In this document: positions 1,701 through 62,160 of the stretch, piece by piece
Layout: each line of letters opens with the position of its first letter
Numbering within the stretch: the first letter of the stretch is position 1
Assembly (NCBI RefSeq): GCF_048593235.1
Contig: NC_133622.1
Coordinates: forward strand, 179,738,001 to 179,802,000
Length of the DNA stretch: 64,000 bases
DNA from: Sminthopsis crassicaudata
Taxonomy: Eukaryota
Direction of reading: 5' to 3'
Notes under the pieces: model-generated
The model's database searches: none
Told to the model about the DNA's origin: nothing
The model's input: only the letters and a program-made list of their open reading frames with translations
Program-made: the position numbers and the translations under genes

Positions 1701-2409
1701 AACCATAAATCAGTAATGTAGTTGGCACTTTCTAGGCCTAAGATGCAGCATAGGTTGTGAGGTCCTCAAGGGCTTTGGGTTCTTTTTTTAATACCCAGTG
1801 TGTAGTACAGAGTCTGGTACATAGTAGGTGCTTAAATGTTTATTAACTGACTGACTATATGAAGGGGAGCTTTGTGCATTGAAGTTTTCCAGTGGGATTT
1901 CATGAAGTTTTTTATCTTGTGTTCTATTTCTGCCTTCTTCTATTGGGAATTCCACTTAAGTAACTGAGTACTGAGCCCCCATTTCTCATTGACTGGAGCA
2001 ACCTCAACAGTGCCCAGACTTCCCTCCTCACAGAAGGGCCAATCTCATGAGTACATGCAGCAATGGAAAGGAGATAGGAAGGTAGGGAGATGGGGGAAAG
2101 ACCAAAGAAACAAGAAGCAACTGATGAAGAGAAGACAAAAGAGACAATCTGAAAATAGAGCTTATAAAGCTCTCTAGATGAGAAGGATGAGTAACTATTA
2201 AGACCTGGCTAGAGCTCAGTAATTGGTTCTGCATGCCTTATACCAGTCTTTCCTCTTGAGTTTCTATGTCACCTAGGGGCAATCAAGACCATTAATTGTA
2301 CAGAACGGATAAGTCATGGGAATGCCCACTACTACCCCAAAATCTTGCAAACAAACCTTTTAATTTTGTCAATTTTGAGCATAGTACATCTGTAGTTGAT
2401 ACACCTCAC

Positions 2410-2488
2410 CTTAGCTCCATGTTTGTGGAGAACCTCTATGACATCATTGTGAGCTCTTTCTGCAGCAACGTGTAAGGGAGTCATGAAG
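2410..2488 (-). CDS. TNKS: TNKS coding exon (about exon 11), 79 nt: (D)[26 protein letters not shown]
   Basis: Acceptor TTTCCCATTTAG (AG at 2489-2490); donor AAG|GTGAGG; phase matches the previous exon (GA|C = Asp). Confidence 0.97.
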
Positions 2489-2587
2489 CTAAATGGGAAA
2501 GAAATGGAAGAATGAAATGTCATTTTAAGAAAAGCAGGGGCTTGGCTCTTAAAAGCTGAAAAACGGTTTTTAATGAAGTAAACATAC

Positions 2588-2679
2588 TCTTTATTCTTTT
2601 CATTCACATTTGCTCCTTTCCGCAGTAAGAGCTCTGTCACTTGCTTACGTTTGGGGTGTAAGGAGGCCACAGCACAATG
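2588..2679 (-). CDS. TNKS: TNKS coding exon (about exon 10), 92 nt: [30 protein letters not shown](D)
   Basis: Acceptor TTTTGTCTTCCAG; donor AGA|GTATGT; ankyrin-repeat translation. Confidence 0.97.
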
Positions 2680-3029
2680 CTGGAAGACAAAACAAAAACA
2701 AAAAACAAAACACAAAATAAAGAGGGTTAATCAAGGTTAATACTGATCTTTTAAAAAAAAAACTCTGAATCCCACCTTTCTGTCCCTAGCTAAAGCCTTG
2801 GCTCTATTCCAAATGCCACCAAAAAACATGTTACCTGAATACTTAATAGAGATGGATGAAATTTTGGGTTGATTTAAAACCAAAATACAAGGATTTTAGA
2901 GTTAAAAGAGGGATCACTGTCTTCAAGCCTATGAAATATGTGTTTCCTCTAATTTTTAGATGAAGCAACTGAGATATAAGCAACAATACAATGTGAGATT
3001 AACTCCTGAAAATAAATTGCATAAATAAT

Positions 3030-3200: not shown

Positions 3201-3411
3201 GACACTGATTCCATGTCCACAGATGCTGCCTATTTCTTCCAGAGAAGCAATCACGAAGGCACTATGGTCTTATTTCTAGCAGATCCGTCATTCTGTGTCT
3301 GTGAGAAAACAGCCAGCAATTCTATTCTATTATCTTGAGAGACTGAACTCTCTCCTCTACTCCCAAGCCTGAGAAAGCTAAGGCTTAAAGATCTCGTCAA
3401 GAAGAGATCTT

Positions 3412-3512
3412 TTATTTATATATTTTTAATTATTATTTATTATATTATTTATATATTTTTATTATTTATATTTTATTTATTATATTATTTATATATTTAA
3501 TTTATATATTAA
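3412..3512. repeat. AT-only low-complexity repeat (TTATA/TATT variants)
   Basis: About 100 nt containing only A and T, read directly. Confidence 0.9.
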
Positions 3513-4179
3513 TTCACGGTTTTTTTTTTTACTATTCCTTGGGTGGGTTCATAAAAAACCTGCTATTGGAGGATATCTATCTACTGAGCTATTGGTGCCA
3601 TTGGGAACAAGAAGGCTGACTGGCCTTCCATATTATACCTTTTTTTCCATATATGGGACTGATCATTAAAGATATTAGACATGAATTGTCAGGAAGCTGA
3701 TGATGATGTTAACTTATGTCCAAACATATTCTGAGAGTGAATGGAAAGAAAACTAAGAAGAACAATCACTGAAATTGAAATAGAACTAATTTATACAGGT
3801 TAGATGAAACAGCTTGACACCTATTGCATAAGTAATCTAATTGGTTAATTCAAAAATTCACATGGATCCTTTATGAAAATCAAGTTTATATTTATGAAAG
3901 TACTAGTTCATAAATAAAGTGCTAAAATGAGATTAGATATAGACCGAGGTCTAAGTGTCCCAAAGACAAAGCTTAACAACTGTTCTGTCCACTGCATTTT
4001 TTTAATTCCTGGAAACAGGCCCAATAAAGCCAATTGTTTTTCAAAATTTAGGTATTTGTTATTGAAAAGCATCTTAGTGAGGTGCTGAATGGTGCTTAAA
4101 AAAAAAAAAAATAGCAAAAAAAAAACCACCTCTGAAAGCCCCGTTCTATTAAAGCAATAAAGTAGTTGGAACTTCTCAC

Positions 4180-33016: not shown

Positions 33017-33030
33017 ACGCGCGCGCACAC

Positions 33031-33071
<41 letters not shown>
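33017..33071. repeat. (CG)n/(CA)n alternating purine-pyrimidine tract
   Basis: acgcgcgcgcacacacacgcacac...; 55 bp. Confidence 0.95.
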
Positions 33072-33074
<3 letters not shown>

Positions 33075-33374
33075 CGCAGATAGGAGCCTGAAAAATTACA
33101 AATGTTCAAGTTTAGCCTCTAAAATAAACTCTTTGCCAGTTTCTTCCTAATCGCCACATAGTGAATCTTCATAAGAAACCAGAGGCCTTAACTCACTAAT
33201 GAGGTGGGAGAAAAGAGAGAAGGGAACATTGCTGGATAAAGAGCAAGACTTATTCCAAAGGCGATCATGGCTACTTATTTCATTTACTACACTACTTATA
33301 TCTTAATTTCCCAAGTCAGCTCCAAACTTTGGGCTTTTTTTTTTTTTTTTGGGGGGGGGGGTTGTTTGGATATG

Positions 33375-34345: not shown

Positions 34346-34875
34346 GCTCTAAACTCTTTGAAAAAAGAAAGTCCTGACTCATTCTATCCAGAGTACCTAA
34401 TATAGGGTCTTAGACTCAGAAGATATTCAAACAGAAATGACATAATTATTAACTAACATAAAATAAACATAAACCACTTGTTAACAGATACTGATACTGC
34501 TAAAGTACCACTATGGGGTACGGGGATCCAGCAATAGTTGGCACTTAAATGTATGATGGGGTTTATCAGCCAGAGACTCATGGCCTGAGTCTACAATTTT
34601 TAGTTTCCTGTTGCTTTTTTAGTCTAAATCAGAGCTTTTCAGATTAGTGGAGAAGTGGCTTTGAAATTGGAGCCAGCAAATGGACCTGAGGTCCAGCTCT
34701 GCAATTAAGTTCTATATGACATTAGAAAGTTCATTTAATTTTCTAGATCTTAGTTTCCTCATCTCTAAAATAGCTGGATAACCCAGATGATTTGAAACAA
34801 GAATTCTTTTCTGTGTTGTCAACCTGGTGGTGAAGCCTGTGGGCCCTAGACCCCTTCTAAGAATCATGATTTTTC

Positions 34876-35022
34876 GGGGCAGCTAGGTGGTGCAATGGAT
34901 AGAGCACCAGACTTGAATTCAGGAGGACCCCAGTTTAAATCTGGTCTCAGACACTTAATACTTCCTAGCTGTGTGACCCTGGGCAAGTCACTTAACCCCA
35001 GCCTCAAAAAAAAAAAAAAATC
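34876..35022 (+). mobile_element. WSINE1-type SINE inserted into a Charlie-like fragment
   Basis: 13-bp TSD aatcatga(t/c)tttt at 34862-34874 and 35023-35035; A-tail. Confidence 0.88.
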
Positions 35023-38579: not shown

Positions 38580-38735
38580 NNNNNNNNNNNNNNNNNNNNN
38601 NNNNNNNNNNNNNNNNNNNNNNNNNNNNNNNNNNNNNNNNNNNNNNNNNNNNNNNNNNNNNNNNNNNNNNNNNNNNNNNNNNNNNNNNNNNNNNNNNNNN
38701 NNNNNNNNNNNNNNNNNNNNNNNNNNNNNNNNNNN
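38580..38735. other. Assembly gap (156 N)
   Basis: Read directly; followed by a polypurine tract to about 38860. Confidence 1.
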
Positions 38736-41078: not shown

Positions 41079-41127
41079 TGCCGTTTTCCTTTTTAACAAA
41101 CAAAACACTCTATTTTTACTAACTTAC

Positions 41128-41203
41128 CTTCCGCCCATCACTTGCATGGCAATTCACATTTAGAGGTGTCAGTAAAGCCATCAGTTTCTCTTCATTACCA
41201 CTC
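41128..41203 (-). CDS. TNKS: TNKS coding exon (about exon 5), 76 nt: [25 protein letters not shown]
   Basis: Acceptor TTTTATTTTTTAG; donor AAG|GTAAGT. Confidence 0.97.
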
Positions 41204-42003
41204 CTAAAAAATAAAATCAATCAATAAAAAATAGTTTCATATAGCCACATACTCTTATTCCTTACACTAAAATCTCTATTTGCTATTATCTCTTTCACAT
41301 GAATCCGGATTACTGATATTTTCCAATGTCATCAGTATTTTTCCAAATAATCACTCTCATTCTTCCTATTCCAGGATGTCCTAATAGAGCCTTGGGCTCC
41401 GGGCACCTCCGTCATAGACCTACACAAAGCCATTTTCTTGATGATCAAAATGAACTTCATACTGCTATCATGTGACCAATAGCATTAGAGCTAGAAAAAT
41501 AAATAAAATGCTATGAAAAGGAAAAAGCTAATAGTTAAATTTTAAAAGCTCTAAAAAACAAAAAAGAGAAAGAAAGATTTTTTTCTGACTGAATATTTGC
41601 CATATACTTGCTACTCTGGCTTTCTTTGGAAAAAAATCTCAAAGAAAAACATCCTGAAAATAAAGCTTTAAGACATAGGAATTAACAAAAACATGTTCTT
41701 AATATACTATTTAGTTCTAAAAACCTAGGGATCTTAGAGGTATGAGGCTTCCTGGCACTATCTTATAAACCAATCTAATTAATAATGCTTATAACCAACA
41801 CCATAATGAAAGATAATTTCATTAACCATCCTTACACCCATTTATAACAAAGACAAAATCTTCAGAGCTGTACTGGCCAATCTAACCACATTATCTCATA
41901 CGGTCAAAGCAAGACAGTGATAACATAACATGTATACAGTTCCCCCACCCCCTTCTTCCTTTCAAATGCATTGTACTTACTTAAATTGAATGAAATCACT
42001 TAC

Positions 42004-42040
42004 CTAGCAGCTTCTAGGAGTTCGTCCTTCTTGTATTCAC
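42004..42040 (-). CDS. TNKS: TNKS coding exon (about exon 4), 37 nt: (G)EYKKDELLEAA(R)
   Basis: Acceptor CATCTAG with a TGCTAAC branch-like motif about 28 nt upstream; donor TAG|GTAAGT. Confidence 0.96.
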
Positions 42041-42062
42041 CTAGATGATTGCAAAATATCAT

Positions 42063-42850
42063 GCTGTTAGCATTTGGCAGAAGACAGATGAAGAAATGCA
42101 GCAGGCAGCAAATACAGAATTAAACAGAGGAAGAACGGGGAAAAAAAAAAAAAAAAAGAGCCCACACCCCGCTGGGTGATGGAGCCGTGACGTGAGCCAG
42201 CTTGTGAAGCAGGCAGCATCACCAGTGCCTTGGAGACCGGCAGCAAATTGACGCAGCTTCTTGTCCAATCCTCCGATGAAATGGCTTGCTTCAGACAACC
42301 AATGAATGTGCAATCTTGGATCCAGAAACACATTCCCCTCTACTAACAGCAGGCCAGCGGAAGACAATGTCCCTTCCCCCCCCCTCCCTTATTCAGACTG
42401 TCACACTAGACTCGTGGAGCATAATCAATTCTGAAGCAAAAGCCAAACACAGTGCGGCTCTTTAAAGGGACAAAATATAACCGTCTTTGAAACACTCCCT
42501 TCCTCATCCCCCTCCAAAATACACTCCTGATTTATTTAGAAGGACAAAGAAAGTTTGTTTTTAAGGTGGTTATTATTACTCTGTAACTATCCATGTTGGG
42601 GCTTCACAGTCCTTAAATAAACTGCAAATAGAAGAAGCAGAGATGTCTCGCCTTCATAGAGAGAGGATGGGTCTGTAGGAAAAAATCCAGGGAAACATGC
42701 ACAGAATGGGATGACCCTTTTATAAGGCAGCGCTCCCTCACATCAGCAAACACAGGGAAATGCTTGGTATATGGCACCAAATGTCCTTTGCTTCCAGAGT
42801 TCTAATAGAGGATTTAGCACAATCTGGGGGTGGGCGTGGGCAATCCTTTA
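42063..42850 (-). promoter_or_regulatory. Candidate internal (alternative) TNKS promoter
   Basis: About 11 CpG in 42136-42483 in an otherwise CpG-poor window. CCAAT at 42265 and 42299; TGACGTGA at 42188; TGACGCA at 42249; minus-strand TATAAAAG at 42717-42724; GC/GT boxes at 42826-42840; no recognisable repeat. Function is inferred. Confidence 0.55.
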
Positions 42851-45800
42851 ACAAACTCAACCCAAATAAAAGCAGAGTATTCTATTACCTGGGCAGGAAC
42901 CAAAGCCTTCCAGTTGAGAGATTCTGGTCTAGTTTTTTGGTTTTTTTTTTTTTTTTTAATTATTACATATAAAAGACTGGATTTTTGAATTCACCATAAT
43001 AATTTTAGCAAATCAATAGCCAAATTGTTTAGGGACTCAAAATACCAGGTTTCTTTTGTAATGTCAAGTGAAGGACAAAGGATTTTTAAAAAATGTATCA
43101 CTTGAAAAATGAGAGACTAACCTGTGACTCAGCATTAATACATTGCCTCAGTTTGTTACATCATTAAAACAAAAATAATTCTCCCAAAGACAGTAAATAT
43201 ATGGAAGCATTTTAAAAATTCACTTTACAAAAGAAAAAGTCAGCAGAAGCAAAGGGTTTATTCTAAAAAAAAAAAAAAATTACATCAAACAGAAGTTAGT
43301 TTAAAATACGTAACCATTTACCTACAGACTTATTCCATGTTTTGCTCTGGGACTATAGCAAGAGAGCCCCACCCACTAGCCATACATCTGTACCTGGCTC
43401 TGTGTTGCCACTAGACCAAAATTAATTTAACATTAAGGAACCCTAACTATAGGCTTTCATATTTTTTAAAGAGTAGTATTAAAATCATTTAAATTTACAA
43501 TTTGATGTAGTGTGCCCAGACAGATCCAGATTCAAGAATGGACTAGACGAGGACAGATCACTTCAATAACATGATACAAGTTTCAAATCTGGCCACTAGT
43601 ACCTACTAGCTAAGTTCATAAGGAAGAACAGCTTTGTTATAAGGACACAAATGCATGATCACAAAAACTCAATCAACTAATTCATGTAGTCTTGATGTAG
43701 GTCTACAGGTGGATTTGAGTTAGTCCTTGAACTAGAATGGGAAAATATTTTTTTATTTGTTTCAATATAACTGAATAATGTTTTATTTTATGCATTTAAA
43801 ACTCAGTTTGGGAAGGGTTCCACATGTTTTACCAAACTGCAAAAAGAGTCCAAGACAAAAAAAAAAAAAAAAAAAAGAAAAGATTGAGAATTAAGAATTT
43901 GATCCAGCCCAATATCATCATTCTATAGATGAGGAACTTGACATCCCAAAAAGGAATATGGACTGCTTAAAAAGTACCACATATATTAAGATGTTAGTAT
44001 TTGAACTCACTTGCCCAATGTTATAAACTGCATAAATTAAAAGATCCTTCTTGAAAACCAGACACAAATTTAATGAAGCAGTAAGGCCTGATGTGAAATG
44101 TAATTATTTGAAACCTACAATCTAAAGTTGTTTTAAGAATTGAAGGCTTCAGCTGACAAATGCTAGAGGGATACAGCTAAATCCATCTTAATTTCTAGGA
44201 TATATGTAATGCTAATATAAAATACAGCAAAATTATGAATACAACACAACATAGGATATTCACTTCCATGCTATAAGTGCTTGTGTTCGTTTTGCAGTAA
44301 AAAGAGATTTAAAAATCCCTTTTAGCTTACCATAACCTGGATTGTAAGCTAAGCTGATAATGACATCATTAGATATGAAATGGGTCCCAAAGAATGAATG
44401 GGAGGGAACAAGAGTGTGTACCTGTAAATCCTGGCATCACCTAAGATACTGGATCTCCTAATTCATACAATTTTATTTAGAAGCTCCATCTAAAACATCC
44501 ATTCTAATGTCTCAATCTACACACTAAGTACTATACAGTACTACGTATGTATATACATACTGTACATAATAGCATATACAGCTGTTGTTTTTAAATAAGC
44601 AAGCAAAAACCCTCTAAATTTTCACAGAAATCCACAACTGTGTGCACACAAAAGACATAGGTGTTAAAATGACTCTTTGTTCATTGTCTTCTGTGCTCTG
44701 GTTTTTAATCAGTATCTGCAATATATTCTAACATCCACTATCTGGTGCTCAAGGACCACCATCTATAAACAGCAAGAATTATTTTTCACATATACCTCTT
44801 CAGGAACCAGGAACATAATGAATTCAAAGCTTCATATAACACTGACAACAAATCTGAACAACTTATTTTTAATCATTCAACCTCCAGCTTTTTCCTATTT
44901 GCTGAGGATCTGAAAATATTCTGGCTCTGATGCTCTGTGGAACTATATTCTATAATAATACACAGATAAAAATTTGCAATAGATCAGCCAGGGAGGAAAC
45001 TGGCAATTACAATCAAGATAATAGCATACAGAAATGATGAGAATAAATGGGTTAAAATATTTTTTATTTGATTAAAAAAACTAAGTGGAATTTTTAAAAA
45101 TGAGCACCCATCCCCCAAAAAGATTGTAATTTCCTATGTTAATTCTCCAAAAAGTTTTGAACTACTTTTATTGCTCCTTACAAATGACAAAATAGAGGTG
45201 AAAGAAACTGTATATTTATTTCTTCTGCAATCCAACAAGTATTTCTTACAAATCACACAGTCTGTCTTCAAGGAGTTTCCATTCTTCTGAGTGAACATGT
45301 GCAGAGAGATGTGCATACTCAATGTAAATAGAAGAAATGCAACATAATGGAAGGGAGGAGGAAGCTGAAAGAAAAACTGTACTAACTGAGGACATTTAAA
45401 AAAAAACGAAAAAAACCCAACTTATTGGTCAGGGACCCTGAACTTGGCACTGAAGGGAGGCAGTTAAGAAAGCCTTCCAGGAATGAGGGGCAGTCAAAGC
45501 AAAAGGCTGCTGGGTTGAGAAGAAACACTGAAAATAAGGGGACCTATTCAACCTGAACAGAGTGTACATATCGGTGTTTGAAAGGAATCAGGAGGGTCAA
45601 TAAAAGACAAATTTATAAAGATGAGGTGCCAAAATTTTCTTTTGACTCTGTGTACATTTGGGAATGAATATGAAGAATACAGAGAGGCAAGAGAAAACTC
45701 ATGAAGAATTGATGATGATGAATAAATCAAGCGGTATCAGGAAAGTAATAAATATAATATCAACAAAAACTTAAAAACCCAGAAAACAAACCGCATATTC

Positions 45801-47390: not shown

Positions 47391-48700
47391 TATAGCTGCA
47401 AGTGCTAGGGAACACAGGAGACAACCTACAATAAAGAGAATTCACTGGGGTCTGCTGTCTCACATCTCACATTTGTGTTTTATACATGTGTATTGCTGAT
47501 GGCTATCCAACCAATGTAAAGCACAAAGCTTTTTACTTCCTCCTAAAAGTTTCAACAGCTAGATTTAAGTTTATATAAGTTAAAAGTCCTCAACCAGGAA
47601 AGCTCATTTGGCTTTAATAACAAGTTAGGCAATCAAGACAATAAATAATTAAGTACCTATTAAGTGCCAGGCACTGTGCTAAATGCAGAGCATATAAAGA
47701 CAAGGGAGTCCCTCTGCTCTCAAGGAACTCTTTTAGTGAGATGATGTGCCAAAAAAAAAAAAAAAAGTACAAATACAGCACAGATAGGAAGAATTGGAAC
47801 TAGTAAACAGAGATCTGGATAAGAGATCTTAGATGCTGACTGTCCCCCACTGATTATCGACCATGGTCATGGGATCACAGACTGAGCTAGAGGAGAGAGG
47901 GAAGTAACTGATGACAACTTCCTTATTTTACAAAGTGAAGACAGAGGCACAGAAAGTTTAAAGAACTTCCCTGGGGTCACATAGCTAGTATCAGAGGCAA
48001 GATGTCATCTCAGGACTTTCTACTATTCTCTCCACCACTTGACCAATTCAAAGATGTAAAACAATTTTTAATAAGAATGATTTGTTTACTCATGTTTGTC
48101 ATAGGCAAACAAATAAGCTTTCACTTTATTTTGCTAAAACCAGATTTCCTCTTCATTTTCTGATTCCCAGTTCTAAGATATACCCTATCCTTCACCTTCG
48201 GGGGGGGGGGGCCTTTGGAAGTCAACTTCCTCCATTACTATGGAAACCCTTATAGTGCTACCTAATATAGGTGTCACCAACATTTAGCAAATTATCTGGC
48301 ACAGAGTAAGCACTTAATAAATGCTCTAAGACTTAGGAGTTATTGAATTACTTTTGCTCTTCGGGCATATAACATTTACAATCAGTAGTCAGGAAAATAT
48401 GAGTCAAAATTCAGCTTTAAATAGCTAATTGACTCTAGGAAAATCCTTAACAACTCTGTGAATCAGTTTCCTCATCTGTAAGAGATAACAATAGTACTAT
48501 CTCCTAAACTTGTTGCAAAGATCAAATGAGTTAACATGCAAACACTGCAAACCTTAAAGGCCATAATAGATATAACTAAGTCAAAAAATCTCCAGTGCTT
48601 CACCTTCCTCCAGCTTGCATATGGCCTTGCATATATACATATCATCTTAATGCCTTACATGTGAACACAACTGATATAATGACTATCTGTAATTTCAGAT

Positions 48701-48940
48701 GGCACCTAGGTGATGCAGTGGATAAAGTGCCAACTGGGAAGCAGAAAGACTCATCTTCCTGAGTTCAAATCTGGCCACAAAAACTTACTAGCTGTGCGAT
48801 CCTGGGCAAGTCACTTAACCCTGTTTGTCTCAGTTTCTTCATTTATAAAATGAGGTGGAGAAGAAAATGACAACCACTCCAGCATCTTTGCCAAGAAAAC
48901 CCTAAATGGAGTTTCAAAGAGTCCTGACTGAACAACAACA
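48701..48940 (+). mobile_element. MAR1-type CORE SINE, near full length
   Basis: CORE head and ...gccaagaaaaccctaaatgg...gactgaacaacaaca tail; possible 9-bp TSD taatt(t/c)cag. Confidence 0.75.
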
Positions 48941-55817: not shown

Positions 55818-55983
55818 TTTCTTTCTTTCTTTTTTTTTTTTTTTTTGGCTGAGGCAATTGGGGTTAAATGACTTGCCCAGAGTCACACAGCTAGGAAGTA
55901 TGAAGTGTCTGAGGTCACATTTGAACTCAGGTCCTCCTGAATTCAGGACTGATGCTCTATCCACTGCACCACTTAGCTGTCCC
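55818..55983 (-). mobile_element. WSINE1-type SINE
   Basis: Reverse complement of the 17108 and 34876 family, with a T-tail. Confidence 0.88.
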
Positions 55984-56319
55984 ACTCCTGACCCATACCA
56001 AGTGCTGTCCAACCACGTAATTGTGAAATGTTCCACAAAATACTCATACAAGATAAATAAATTTGGGGTTTTCTAAATTAACATGCATCATTTTCTATTT
56101 GAATTTGACACCACTACCTTATACCACACTGCCTTTTTTGGCCATTCTAGTCTACTACCACAAATAATAACAGTTAACATTTATATAGCACCTTTTATAT
56201 GCATATGTGTTCATCTCAGAGCCCTAGCACATAGGTGCTTATTATTAAGCACCATTAATAATTATTATTAACCTCATTTTTAAGGATAAAGAAACAGAAG
56301 CAAAGAGGTGAAGTCAAAT

Positions 56320-61959: not shown

Positions 61960-62160
61960 TGATCATGATATTTTGTGACCTTATTTGAGATTTTCTTTAC
62001 AGAAATACTGGAGTAGTTTGCCTTTTCCTTCTGCAGCTCATTTTAAAGATGAGAAAACTGAGTCAAAAAGGGTTAAGTGACTTGCTCAGGATCACACAAG
62101 AAAACTGGAGTCTTCTCCACTCCAGCCTTGGCAGTCTATCCATTGCACCACCTAGCTGAT
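61960..62160 (-). mobile_element. MAR1-type SINE
   Basis: tactggagtagtttgccttttccttc...gggttaagtgacttgctcagg...ccacctagctg. Confidence 0.7.

What the first reader, a model, noticed from the sequence alone, without database searches (positions are those of the whole stretch)
42136..42850. Internal promoter signature deep inside TNKS
This is the densest non-repeat CpG cluster I found in the window (about 11 CpG in 350 bp). It includes two same-strand CCAAT boxes 34 bp apart (a tandem NF-Y-like arrangement), TGACGTGA (CRE/UPRE-like), TGACGCA, a CACCC box, a poly-C/MAZ-like tract, a minus-strand TATAAAAG and upstream GC/GT boxes. Together with the in-frame ATG and the nearby octamer palindrome, it suggests a self-contained alternative transcription unit. 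It might also be bidirectional or an enhancer.
Basis: partly seen in the sequence, partly recalled or inferred. Interest (0 to 1): 0.75.

Follow-up and report, generated by a model that had tools for sequence, protein, structure and literature searches.

The report
Conserved internal promoter block in TNKS
About 350 bases just upstream of a small tankyrase-1 exon in this marsupial are almost unchanged in a distant vertebrate and recognisable in fish; they most likely form the promoter and leader for a shorter tankyrase-1 that starts inside the gene, but no transcript start could be shown here.

Summary
42136-42485 is the window's top CpG patch: 11 CpG, observed/expected 0.51 against a background of 0.09. 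It does not meet CpG-island criteria.

TNKS runs on the minus strand, and the patch lies directly 5' of its 37-nt exon (42004-42040).

The proximal part, 42041-42390, is a deeply conserved non-coding block:
- A 4.5-kb contig of an unknown distant vertebrate (L011) aligns only there, at 87% identity (about 94% in the core). Both CCAAT boxes, both CRE-like sites and the GT box are intact.
- Non-coding upstream DNA of a fish-like locus (L001) hits only 42174-42344 in the window (E=1.5e-10).
- Fish loci are CpG-rich at the same position.

The distal part (42391-42850), with the TATA box and GC boxes, is not conserved.

Best reading (0.6): an ancient internal promoter plus leader for a tankyrase-1 that begins at the ARC1/ARC2 border.

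A mouse testis-specific alternative TNKS promoter (TANK1a) is published, but I could not show it is the same one.

The scan had already noted the ATG on this same window (s1-153320).

The parts
42004..42040 (-). Canonical 37-nt TNKS exon, encoding (G)EYKKDELLEAA(R), the first helix of ankyrin repeat cluster 2.
   Evidence: Translation. The acceptor CTAG| and the donor |GTAAGT are visible. Exact peptide match to residues 20-33 of the Tankyrase-1 ARC2-3 chain 3utm_A and residues 164-177 of the ARC1-3 chain 5jhq_A.
42041..42062 (-). A 22-nt upstream extension of the exon. It holds an in-frame ATG (42062-42060) and the codons for M-I-F-C-N-H-L and the first base of G. This is the proposed start of the short isoform.
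Evidence: A is at -3 in all twelve sequences. Every difference between the window, L011 and the fish loci is synonymous. L011 was found without using this peptide.
42063..42129 (-). Conserved block B: the proposed 5' leader. In the canonical transcript it is also the branch-point (TGCTAAC) and acceptor region.
   Evidence: About 95% identical to L011 in the global alignment. A short upstream ATG at 42073 opens a 4-codon frame whose stop overlaps the main ATG.
42130..42157 (-). Variable pyrimidine-rich spacer. It is T17 in this genome (the A run 42141-42157 on the + strand). A candidate zone for transcript starts, by inference only.
   Evidence: The sequence is not conserved, but both species are pyrimidine-rich here.
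42160..42390 (-). Conserved block A: the proposed core and proximal promoter. In + strand coordinates it holds a GT/CACCC box (42160-42170), CRE-like TGACGTGA (42188-42195), CRE-like TGACGCA (42249-42255), CCAAT (42265-42269), a consensus NF-Y-type CCAAT (42299-42303) and a run of nine C (42376-42384).
   Evidence: blastn aligns L011 to the window only at 42381-41997, at 87% over 390 nt. The core 42160-42310 is about 94% identical and all five motifs are intact. nhmmer of the non-coding L001 upstream sequence against the whole window gives a single significant hit at 42344-42174, minus strand, E=1.5e-10. A profile of four species gives weak hits at matching positions in teleost loci. Five of the seven CpG in this block are kept, at or next to the same position, in L011 (my count on the alignment).
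42391..42850 (.). It holds the minus-strand TATAAAAG (42717-42724), the GGGTGGGCGTGGGC boxes (42828-42841) and three scattered CpG. It is not conserved and probably not part of the element.
   Evidence: No alignment to L011, even with 7-nt words and lenient scores. The L001 nhmmer hit does not reach it. If transcription started here, six more short upstream ATG frames would precede the main ATG.

Best explanation
The proximal 350 nt of the stretch (42041-42390, read on the minus strand) form an ancient internal promoter and leader of TNKS. By inference, ubiquitous activators bind the conserved sites: NF-Y at the two CCAAT boxes, CREB/ATF-type factors at the two TGACG sites, and an Sp/KLF factor at the GT box. 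These would start transcription inside the intron, probably between the last TGACG site and the conserved leader (roughly 42220-42080). The transcript would run straight into the 37-nt exon without an upstream splice. Translation would start at the ATG at 42062 and give M-I-F-C-N-H-L-G-E-Y-K-K... The product is a tankyrase-1 without the His/Pro/Ser-rich region and ankyrin repeat cluster 1, but with clusters 2-5, the SAM domain and the PARP domain.

Shown here: the motifs, the CpG excess, the deep conservation of the block, the coding-type conservation of the ATG extension, and its position at the ARC1/ARC2 border.

Inferred: which factors bind, where transcription starts, in which tissues, and that the short protein is made in this animal.
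For: 1. Position and strand. TNKS exons lie on the minus strand, and the block abuts the 37-nt exon and its in-frame ATG.

2. Conservation found without using the peptide. The out-of-frame 88-aa frame across the block gave P0014 and its contig L011. Of that 4.5-kb contig, only 383 nt align to the window, at 42381-41997 with 87% identity. The core is about 94% identical, all five motifs are intact, and the flanks on both sides cannot be aligned.

3. Fish. The non-coding upstream DNA of L001 gives a single significant hit in the 64-kb window, at 42344-42174, E=1.5e-10. A four-species profile hits four teleost loci at the same profile positions, on the same strand, 190-310 nt upstream of their ATG, with E 0.03-0.15 each. 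In nine of the ten fish loci, the 400 nt upstream of the ATG have CpG observed/expected 0.67-1.05, against 0.39-0.66 for each whole locus.

4. Coding signature. ATG plus seven codons are identical in protein in the window, L011 and ten fish loci, with changes only at synonymous sites. Protein-level identity stops at the M: fish read SDT-M, while the window and L011 read ANS-M.

5. Gene models that start at this ATG and splice on to the next exon exist in Liparis tanakae (named Tankyrase-1) and Crenichthys baileyi. An Acipenser sinensis model carries the same M-I-F-C-N-H-L-G 17 residues after its own start.

6. The CpG excess is significant.

7. Sequencing runs. Eight small runs of the source species from two studies hold 28-53% of the sampled words of 41100-43000. 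Four RNA runs of a relative hold 22-28%. The two canonical exons make up only about 7% of that stretch.

8. Precedent. A mouse TNKS product made from an alternative promoter is published (PMC2441437).
Against: - No transcript start, cap signal, splice-joined contig or chromatin mark was obtained for this site. The run shares cannot be assigned to the block rather than to the neighbouring intron.
- The fish loci were found through the peptide itself, so their perfect protein identity is partly built into the search. Only L011 is an unbiased check.
- The species of L011 and L001 are unknown.
- The CCAAT boxes are not conserved in L001 or the teleosts at the aligned positions. Only the TGACG-type sites and a few other short words are.
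- Two upstream ATGs (42333, 42219) open frames that overlap the main ATG. A start upstream of 42219 would therefore translate poorly.
- The block is also the branch-point and acceptor neighbourhood of a frame-shifting exon, so part of the constraint could come from splicing.
- The primer specific for the mouse TANK1a transcript has no significant match in the block.
Confidence: 0.6

Rival explanations
1. The block is a conserved intronic enhancer or another start-less regulatory element, acting on the main TNKS promoter or on a neighbouring gene. The ATG extension would be conserved for some other reason.
For: Most deeply conserved non-coding blocks in vertebrate introns are enhancers (general knowledge). 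The block is a dense cluster of factor sites. Its conservation is sharply bounded. No transcript start was shown.
Against: The block is continuous with a conserved leader and an ATG whose following codons change only at synonymous sites. Protein-level identity begins exactly at the M. Gene models in three fish contain this M-I-F-C-N-H-L-G stretch, and two of them start at it. An enhancer does not explain that.
Confidence: 0.17
2. The block is a splicing-control region for the 37-nt exon. Skipping that exon shifts the reading frame, so conserved intronic sequence could tune its inclusion.
For: The block touches the acceptor and contains the branch point and a pyrimidine tract. Regulated exons often have highly conserved flanks (general knowledge). 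The exon length is not a multiple of three.
Against: Conservation is one-sided. Beyond GTAAGTG the downstream intron does not align at all. Conservation reaches 350 nt upstream, keeps CpGs, and is CpG-rich in fish. The last 21 nt before the exon vary only at third or synonymous codon positions, which is a protein-coding pattern, not an acceptor pattern. The RNA shows no unusual folding stability (z = -0.05).
Confidence: 0.1
3. The block is a promoter that fires on the + strand (antisense to TNKS), or in both directions, and makes a non-coding RNA.
For: On the + strand the order is GT box, two TGACG sites, then two forward CCAAT boxes. That would place a start near 42360-42420. NF-Y sites work in either orientation (general knowledge).
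Against: Nothing beyond 42390 is conserved. No Rfam family matches. The only conserved reading frame lies on the minus strand. This rival does not exclude the main explanation.
Confidence: 0.08
4. The cluster is a chance grouping of short motifs in a slightly GC-richer patch, or the relic of a transposable element.
For: Each motif is short. CCAAT, CACCC and TATAAA occur 0.6-1.8 times per 715 bp in this window. The stretch is bracketed by an A run and a T run.
Against: 87-94% identity to a species whose flanking intron cannot be aligned. A unique significant hit from fish non-coding DNA. No second copy in the window. The CpG excess has P of about 2e-3 after correction. This reading may still hold for the distal part, 42391-42850.
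Confidence: 0.03

Closest known systems
Mouse TANK1a: a tankyrase-1 product made from an alternative promoter, testis-specific, from cDNA AK046840 (Chiang et al. 2008, PMC2441437)
   Same: The same gene and a second promoter downstream of exon 1. The product lacks the His/Pro/Ser-rich region and is still made when exon 1 and the first promoter are deleted. By my arithmetic on the published primer positions, that cDNA has about 363 nt upstream of the 37-nt exon. The conserved block here is about 350 nt long.
   Different: The paper's text does not say where the promoter lies. Its TANK1a-specific primer has no significant match in the conserved block of this window or of L011. The first exon of TANK1a may therefore lie elsewhere and be spliced in. 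The authors describe the protein as lacking only the His/Pro/Ser-rich region, whereas a start at this ATG would also remove ankyrin repeat cluster 1.
TATA-less promoters with two NF-Y (CCAAT) boxes about three helical turns apart, as in many cell-cycle genes (from my own knowledge, not checked in a paper here)
   Same: Two CCAAT boxes lie 34 bp apart on the same strand. The distal one matches the extended NF-Y consensus. There is no conserved TATA box, and GT/Sp-type and TGACG sites are nearby. Both boxes and their flanks are identical in L011.
   Different: No transcript start is known, so the usual -60 to -100 placement cannot be checked. The boxes are not kept at the aligned positions in fish. 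I saw no CHR or CDE element.
CRE-dependent promoters (CREB/CREM/ATF), including germ-cell promoters (from my own knowledge)
   Same: There are two TGACG-containing sites. The proximal one (GTGACG) is kept in the window, L011, L008 and the second teleost group. The distal one (TGACGCA) is kept in the window, L011 and L001. The kept CpGs fit low methylation in the germ line.
   Different: Neither site is the full palindrome TGACGTCA. No expression data were obtained.
Internal promoters that give N-terminally shortened proteins, for example the dystrophin Dp260/Dp140/Dp71 series (abstract of PMC7372313, listed)
   Same: An intronic promoter with its own short unique N-terminus, joined to the common downstream exons and cutting the protein at a domain border.
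   Different: Here the unique first exon is simply an upstream extension of a shared exon. Only seven new residues are added.
Deeply conserved non-coding elements of vertebrates
   Same: More than 200 nt at about 94% identity between distant species, with flanks that cannot be aligned, and detectable in fish.
   Different: Most such elements are distal enhancers near developmental genes. This one abuts an exon and a conserved start codon in a housekeeping-type enzyme gene.

Membership tests
CpG island (Gardiner-Garden and Frommer criteria) | At least 200 bp with GC >= 0.5 and CpG observed/expected >= 0.6. | tested here: not met
   No 200-bp window in 42000-43100 meets both criteria. The best window has observed/expected 0.60 at GC 0.48. 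The 350-bp peak has GC 0.50 and observed/expected 0.51.
CpG island (Gardiner-Garden and Frommer criteria) | A local CpG excess over the surrounding genome. | tested here: met
   Observed/expected is 0.51 against 0.09. There are 11 CpG where 2.0 are expected, P=1e-5. The same position is CpG-rich in nine of the ten fish loci.
RNA polymerase II promoter of an alternative first exon | Transcripts start here (capped 5' ends). | not testable with these tools
All runs on offer were kept as contigs only.
RNA polymerase II promoter of an alternative first exon | An open reading frame that begins in the new first exon, continues in frame into the shared exons, and is conserved as coding sequence. | tested here: met
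   The ATG at 42062 is in frame with the 37-nt exon. Only synonymous differences occur across twelve sequences, and identity begins at the M.
RNA polymerase II promoter of an alternative first exon | A cluster of binding sites for general activators, conserved between species, directly upstream. | tested here: met
   The CCAAT boxes, TGACG sites and GT box are identical in L011. The TGACG-type sites are recognisable in fish. Binding itself was not tested.
NF-Y double-CCAAT promoter | CCAAT boxes with the NF-Y flanking consensus, 60-100 nt upstream of the start. | tested here: inconclusive
   The distal box fits the extended consensus as I recall it, and the proximal box fits partly. The distance to a start cannot be measured. 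The boxes are conserved in L011 but not in L001.
Mouse TANK1a alternative promoter (PMC2441437) | The transcript carries the TANK1a-specific 5' sequence (primer TNK1AF151). | tested here: not met
   The best local alignments of the primer to 42042-42900 and to L011 score no better than shuffled primers: 197 of 300 and 95 of 300 shuffles reach the same score. Mouse DNA itself was not available, so this lowers the case for identity but does not exclude it.
Mouse TANK1a alternative promoter (PMC2441437) | Testis-restricted expression, independent of exon 1. | not testable with these tools
   No tissue-resolved reads could be laid.
Deeply conserved non-coding element | High identity over more than 100 nt between distant vertebrates, with neutral flanks that cannot be aligned. 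| tested here: met
   (87% over 390 nt, about 94% in the core, flanks not alignable). (fish-like locus, E=1.5e-10, the only hit in 64 kb). Caveat: the species of L011 and L001 are not known.
Structured RNA element or known RNA family | A match to an Rfam model, or folding energy beyond that of shuffled sequence. | tested here: not met
   There is no Rfam match in 41250-44500 apart from one chance-level hit at 41698-41724, E=0.75. The folding z-score is -0.05.

The most novel reading that the evidence does not exclude
A promoter inside TNKS, older than the split between ray-finned fish and mammals, makes a tankyrase-1 that starts exactly at the ARC1/ARC2 border. Its regulatory block is among the most strongly conserved non-coding DNA of the locus. 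Vertebrates would then have always made two tankyrase-1 proteins with different docking capacity, controlled separately (for example in germ cells or dividing cells). Exon-1 knock-outs and antibodies against the N-terminus would miss the second one.
Probability: 0.45. Interest if true: 0.6.

Novelty: new member of a known kind. Interest (0 to 1): 0.5.

Why it matters
Tankyrase-1 is a drug target (Wnt signalling, telomeres, mitosis), and its ankyrin repeat clusters decide which proteins it captures. A conserved second promoter giving a form without cluster 1 and without the His/Pro/Ser-rich region would have three consequences:
- Knock-outs that remove exon 1, as in the published mouse (PMC2441437), are not nulls.
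- Reagents against the N-terminus under-report the protein.
- Substrate choice may be tuned by promoter use.

The near-invariant 230-nt block gives a small, precise target for reporter and deletion tests. As a kind of feature it is ordinary, since internal promoters are common, and a second TNKS promoter has been reported in the mouse.

Tried and rejected
- **Read laying.** No start, strand or depth data exist.
- **Exact look-ups.** The two frames across the block (88 aa and 102 aa) are not on record.
- **Word search limits.** The 39-aa frame holding the ATG is too short for the word search. I used the representative search instead.
- **Teleost-only profile.** Searched against the window, it gave no significant hit, only low-complexity matches. 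Fish conservation therefore rests on L001 and on the weak hits at matching positions.
- **Spliced transcript contigs.** A search for contigs starting at this ATG, using P0002 and P0007 region 1-40, returned only genomic open frames and three gene models.
- **Rfam and RNA folding.** Nothing found.
- **Transposable element reading.** Rejected because there is no second copy in the window and the block is conserved across species.
- **Mouse TANK1a primer.** No significant match.
- **Literature.** Beyond Chiang et al. 2008 I found nothing on an internal TNKS promoter. The dunnart chromatin paper does not mention TNKS in its text or held supplements.
- **Metagenome DNA scan.** I did not scan metagenome contigs with the conserved core, because hits could be human contamination that I could not recognise.

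Full report
**Setting**

The window is AT-rich (GC 0.36) and very poor in CpG, with observed/expected 0.10. Earlier notes of this scan call the genome the fat-tailed dunnart. I did not test that. It fits the composition and the recurrent SINE copies I saw.

Tankyrase-1 exons lie on the minus strand. That exon encodes (G)EYKKDELLEAA(R). The peptide sits at residues 20-33 of the solved ARC2-3 construct 3utm_A and at residues 164-177 of the ARC1-3 construct 5jhq_A. The exon therefore opens ankyrin repeat cluster 2.

The previous canonical exon is not in the window. I searched the minus strand up to 64000 for its peptide words and found none. The intron is therefore longer than 22 kb.

**The observation**

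- Two + strand CCAAT boxes at 42265 and 42299.
- TGACGTGA at 42188 and TGACGCA at 42249, each unique in the 64 kb on both strands.
- CACCC at 42165 and a run of nine C at 42376.
- A minus-strand TATAAAAG at 42717-42724.
- GT/GC boxes at 42828-42841.

The 350 bp from 42136 hold 11 CpG at GC 0.50 and observed/expected 0.51. From the local base content and the background ratio, 2.0 are expected. That gives P=1e-5, or about 2e-3 after allowing for the number of windows.

It is the top CpG window. The runner-up is a (CG)n(CA)n microsatellite. The stretch is single-copy in the window.

It is not a CpG island by the usual criteria. A raw count of promoter-type words is not exceptional unless windows are matched for GC.

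**What lies next to it**

Read on the minus strand, the exon is preceded by an in-frame ATG at 42062 with A at -3.

I re-derived part of that. A search of protein representatives with the 39-aa open frame 42003-42119 returned six open frames that all read ...SDT-MIFCNHLGEYKKDELLEAAR. Further word searches added more, including three gene models:
- Liparis tanakae, named Tankyrase-1. It starts at this M and continues into the next exon.
- Crenichthys baileyi, likewise.
- Acipenser sinensis. Its model carries the same stretch 17 residues after its own start and also continues into the next exon.

In the ten fish loci I fetched (L001-L010), the 21 nt after the ATG differ from the window at six positions, all synonymous. 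These loci were found through the peptide, so their protein identity is partly built into the search. The synonymous scatter still shows that the constraint acts on the protein. Protein-level identity starts exactly at the M: fish read SDT-M and the window reads ANS-M.

**Conservation of the stretch itself**

This is the new result, and it comes from three tests.

First, I searched with the out-of-frame 88-aa frame that happens to cross the block (42070-42333, minus strand). That search knows nothing of the tankyrase peptide. It gave one protein, P0014, on a 4.5-kb Logan contig, L011.
- blastn aligns L011 to the window only at 42381-41997, at 87% over 390 nt.
- With 7-nt words and lenient scores, nothing else aligns in 3.2 kb upstream or 1 kb downstream. 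This species is therefore far outside the dasyurids.
- In the global alignment the core 42160-42310 is about 94% identical. Both CCAAT boxes with their flanks, both TGACG sites and the GT box are intact.
- Five of the seven CpG in the block are kept at or next to the same position.
- The block then passes through a variable pyrimidine-rich spacer (T17 here) into a second conserved piece, 42129-42041. That piece holds the branch point, the ATG and the seven codons, with one synonymous change.
- Beyond the donor GTAAGTG the similarity stops.

I do not know the species of L011. It has no Alu-like or B1-like sequence and no A or T run of ten or more, so I did not take it for human. I cannot exclude a placental mammal.

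Second, I took the non-coding 870 nt upstream of the ATG of L001. This is an unannotated NCBI assembly whose open frame carries the fish-type SDT-M signature. The aligned words include TGCGTCA, TCCAAG-CACTG, CACAA-CTG and GTCACGG-T-CATCA.

Third, a profile of the window, L011, L001 and L008 hits four loci of a second teleost group. The hits fall at the same profile positions, on the same strand, 190-310 nt upstream of their ATG, with E 0.03-0.15 each. Each is weak alone but they are consistent in place. A profile of those teleosts alone did not find the window.

In nine of the ten fish loci, the 400 nt upstream of the ATG have CpG observed/expected 0.67-1.05, against 0.39-0.66 for each locus as a whole. 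The position is therefore CpG-rich across vertebrates.

**How it most likely works**

The simplest reading joins the two facts. A start codon that has been used as such since before fish and mammals split needs a transcript whose 5' end lies upstream of it and outside the canonical reading frame. The only conserved DNA upstream is a 230-nt cluster of activator sites that keeps its CpGs.

I therefore read 42160-42390 as the promoter, 42063-42129 as the leader, and the spacer region as the likely start zone. A start downstream of 42219 would also avoid the two upstream ATGs whose frames overlap the main ATG.

The product would lack the His/Pro/Ser-rich region and ankyrin repeat cluster 1 and keep everything else. 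Which factors bind (NF-Y, CREB/ATF, Sp/KLF) is inferred from the motifs alone. The CCAAT boxes are kept in L011 but not in fish. The TGACG-type sites are the oldest part.

**Transcript evidence is indirect**

- Eight small runs (0.5-1.6 thousand million letters) of the source species, from two studies, hold 28-53% of the sampled words of 41100-43000.
- Four runs labelled RNA-Seq from a related species hold 22-28%.
- The two canonical exons are only about 130 of the 1901 nt.
- At such depth a roughly 3-Gb genome would not assemble. My inference is that something non-exonic here is enriched.

I also did not join exons into a spliced protein for any search, so full-length short-isoform proteins of tetrapods could not be looked for.

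**Rivals**

- An enhancer without its own start (0.17) fits the conservation but not the coding signature.
- A splicing-control region for the frame-shifting 37-nt exon (0.10) fits the adjacency. It does not fit the one-sided 350-nt extent, the kept CpGs, the third-position pattern or the ordinary folding energy (z = -0.05).
- An antisense or two-way promoter (0.08) is not excluded and could coexist with the main reading.
- Chance or a transposon relic (0.03) is contradicted for the proximal part and is likely for the distal part.
- No Rfam family matches.

**Comparison with what is known**

A review (PMC4262938) cites Chiang et al. 2008 (PMC2441437). That paper found that mice lacking exon 1 and the first promoter still make, in testis only, a smaller tankyrase-1, named TANK1a. 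It comes from an alternative promoter and corresponds to cDNA AK046840.

From the published primer positions I calculate that this cDNA has about 363 nt ahead of the 37-nt exon. That is close to the 350-nt length of the conserved block. However, the TANK1a-specific primer has no significant match in the block of the window or of L011, and the text does not place the promoter. Identity is therefore open.

I found no other paper on an internal TNKS promoter.

**Verdict**

The proximal half is a real, ancient regulatory block placed as a promoter should be. The distal half is probably noise. Transcription from the site remains unproven.
- As a kind of feature it is a new, well-delimited member of a known class.
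- The same window's ATG had already been noted by the scan (s1-153320). This report adds the conserved block upstream of it.

Noticed in passing
window 33018-33075: The second-highest CpG peak of the window is a (CG)n(CA)n microsatellite, not a regulatory patch.
   Followed up: yes
window 2335-2730 (minus strand): Two TNKS exons (...[30 protein letters not shown] and [26 protein letters not shown]) are separated by a short intron that is stop-free and in frame. One 132-aa open frame spans both, so retaining that intron would keep the reading frame.
   Followed up: no
window 34860-34934 (-), 48698-48784 (-), 55925-56017 (+), 62077-62160 (+): Four copies of a short interspersed repeat, each with an open frame that reads ...YPLHHLA... 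I took it for a marsupial tRNA-derived SINE from memory only.
   Followed up: no
window 3400-3520: An AT-rich simple repeat (TTATTTATAT units). It gives the window's highest count of TATAAA-type words and would mislead a plain motif scan.
   Followed up: yes
window 38580-38735: A run of 156 N (a gap or masked stretch).
   Followed up: no
window 42889 (minus strand): A donor-like CAG|GTAATA lies about 500 nt upstream of the conserved block. It is not conserved in L011, and I saw no sign of an exon.
   Followed up: partly
L001 about 540 nt and L008 about 470 nt upstream of their ATG: Both fish-like loci carry an identical consensus inverted CCAAT box (CTGATTGGCTGAGAGG) upstream of the conserved core. 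It does not align with the window's boxes. Fish may therefore have their own NF-Y site at a different place in the same promoter.
   Followed up: partly
I did not send it to any search afterwards.
   Followed up: no
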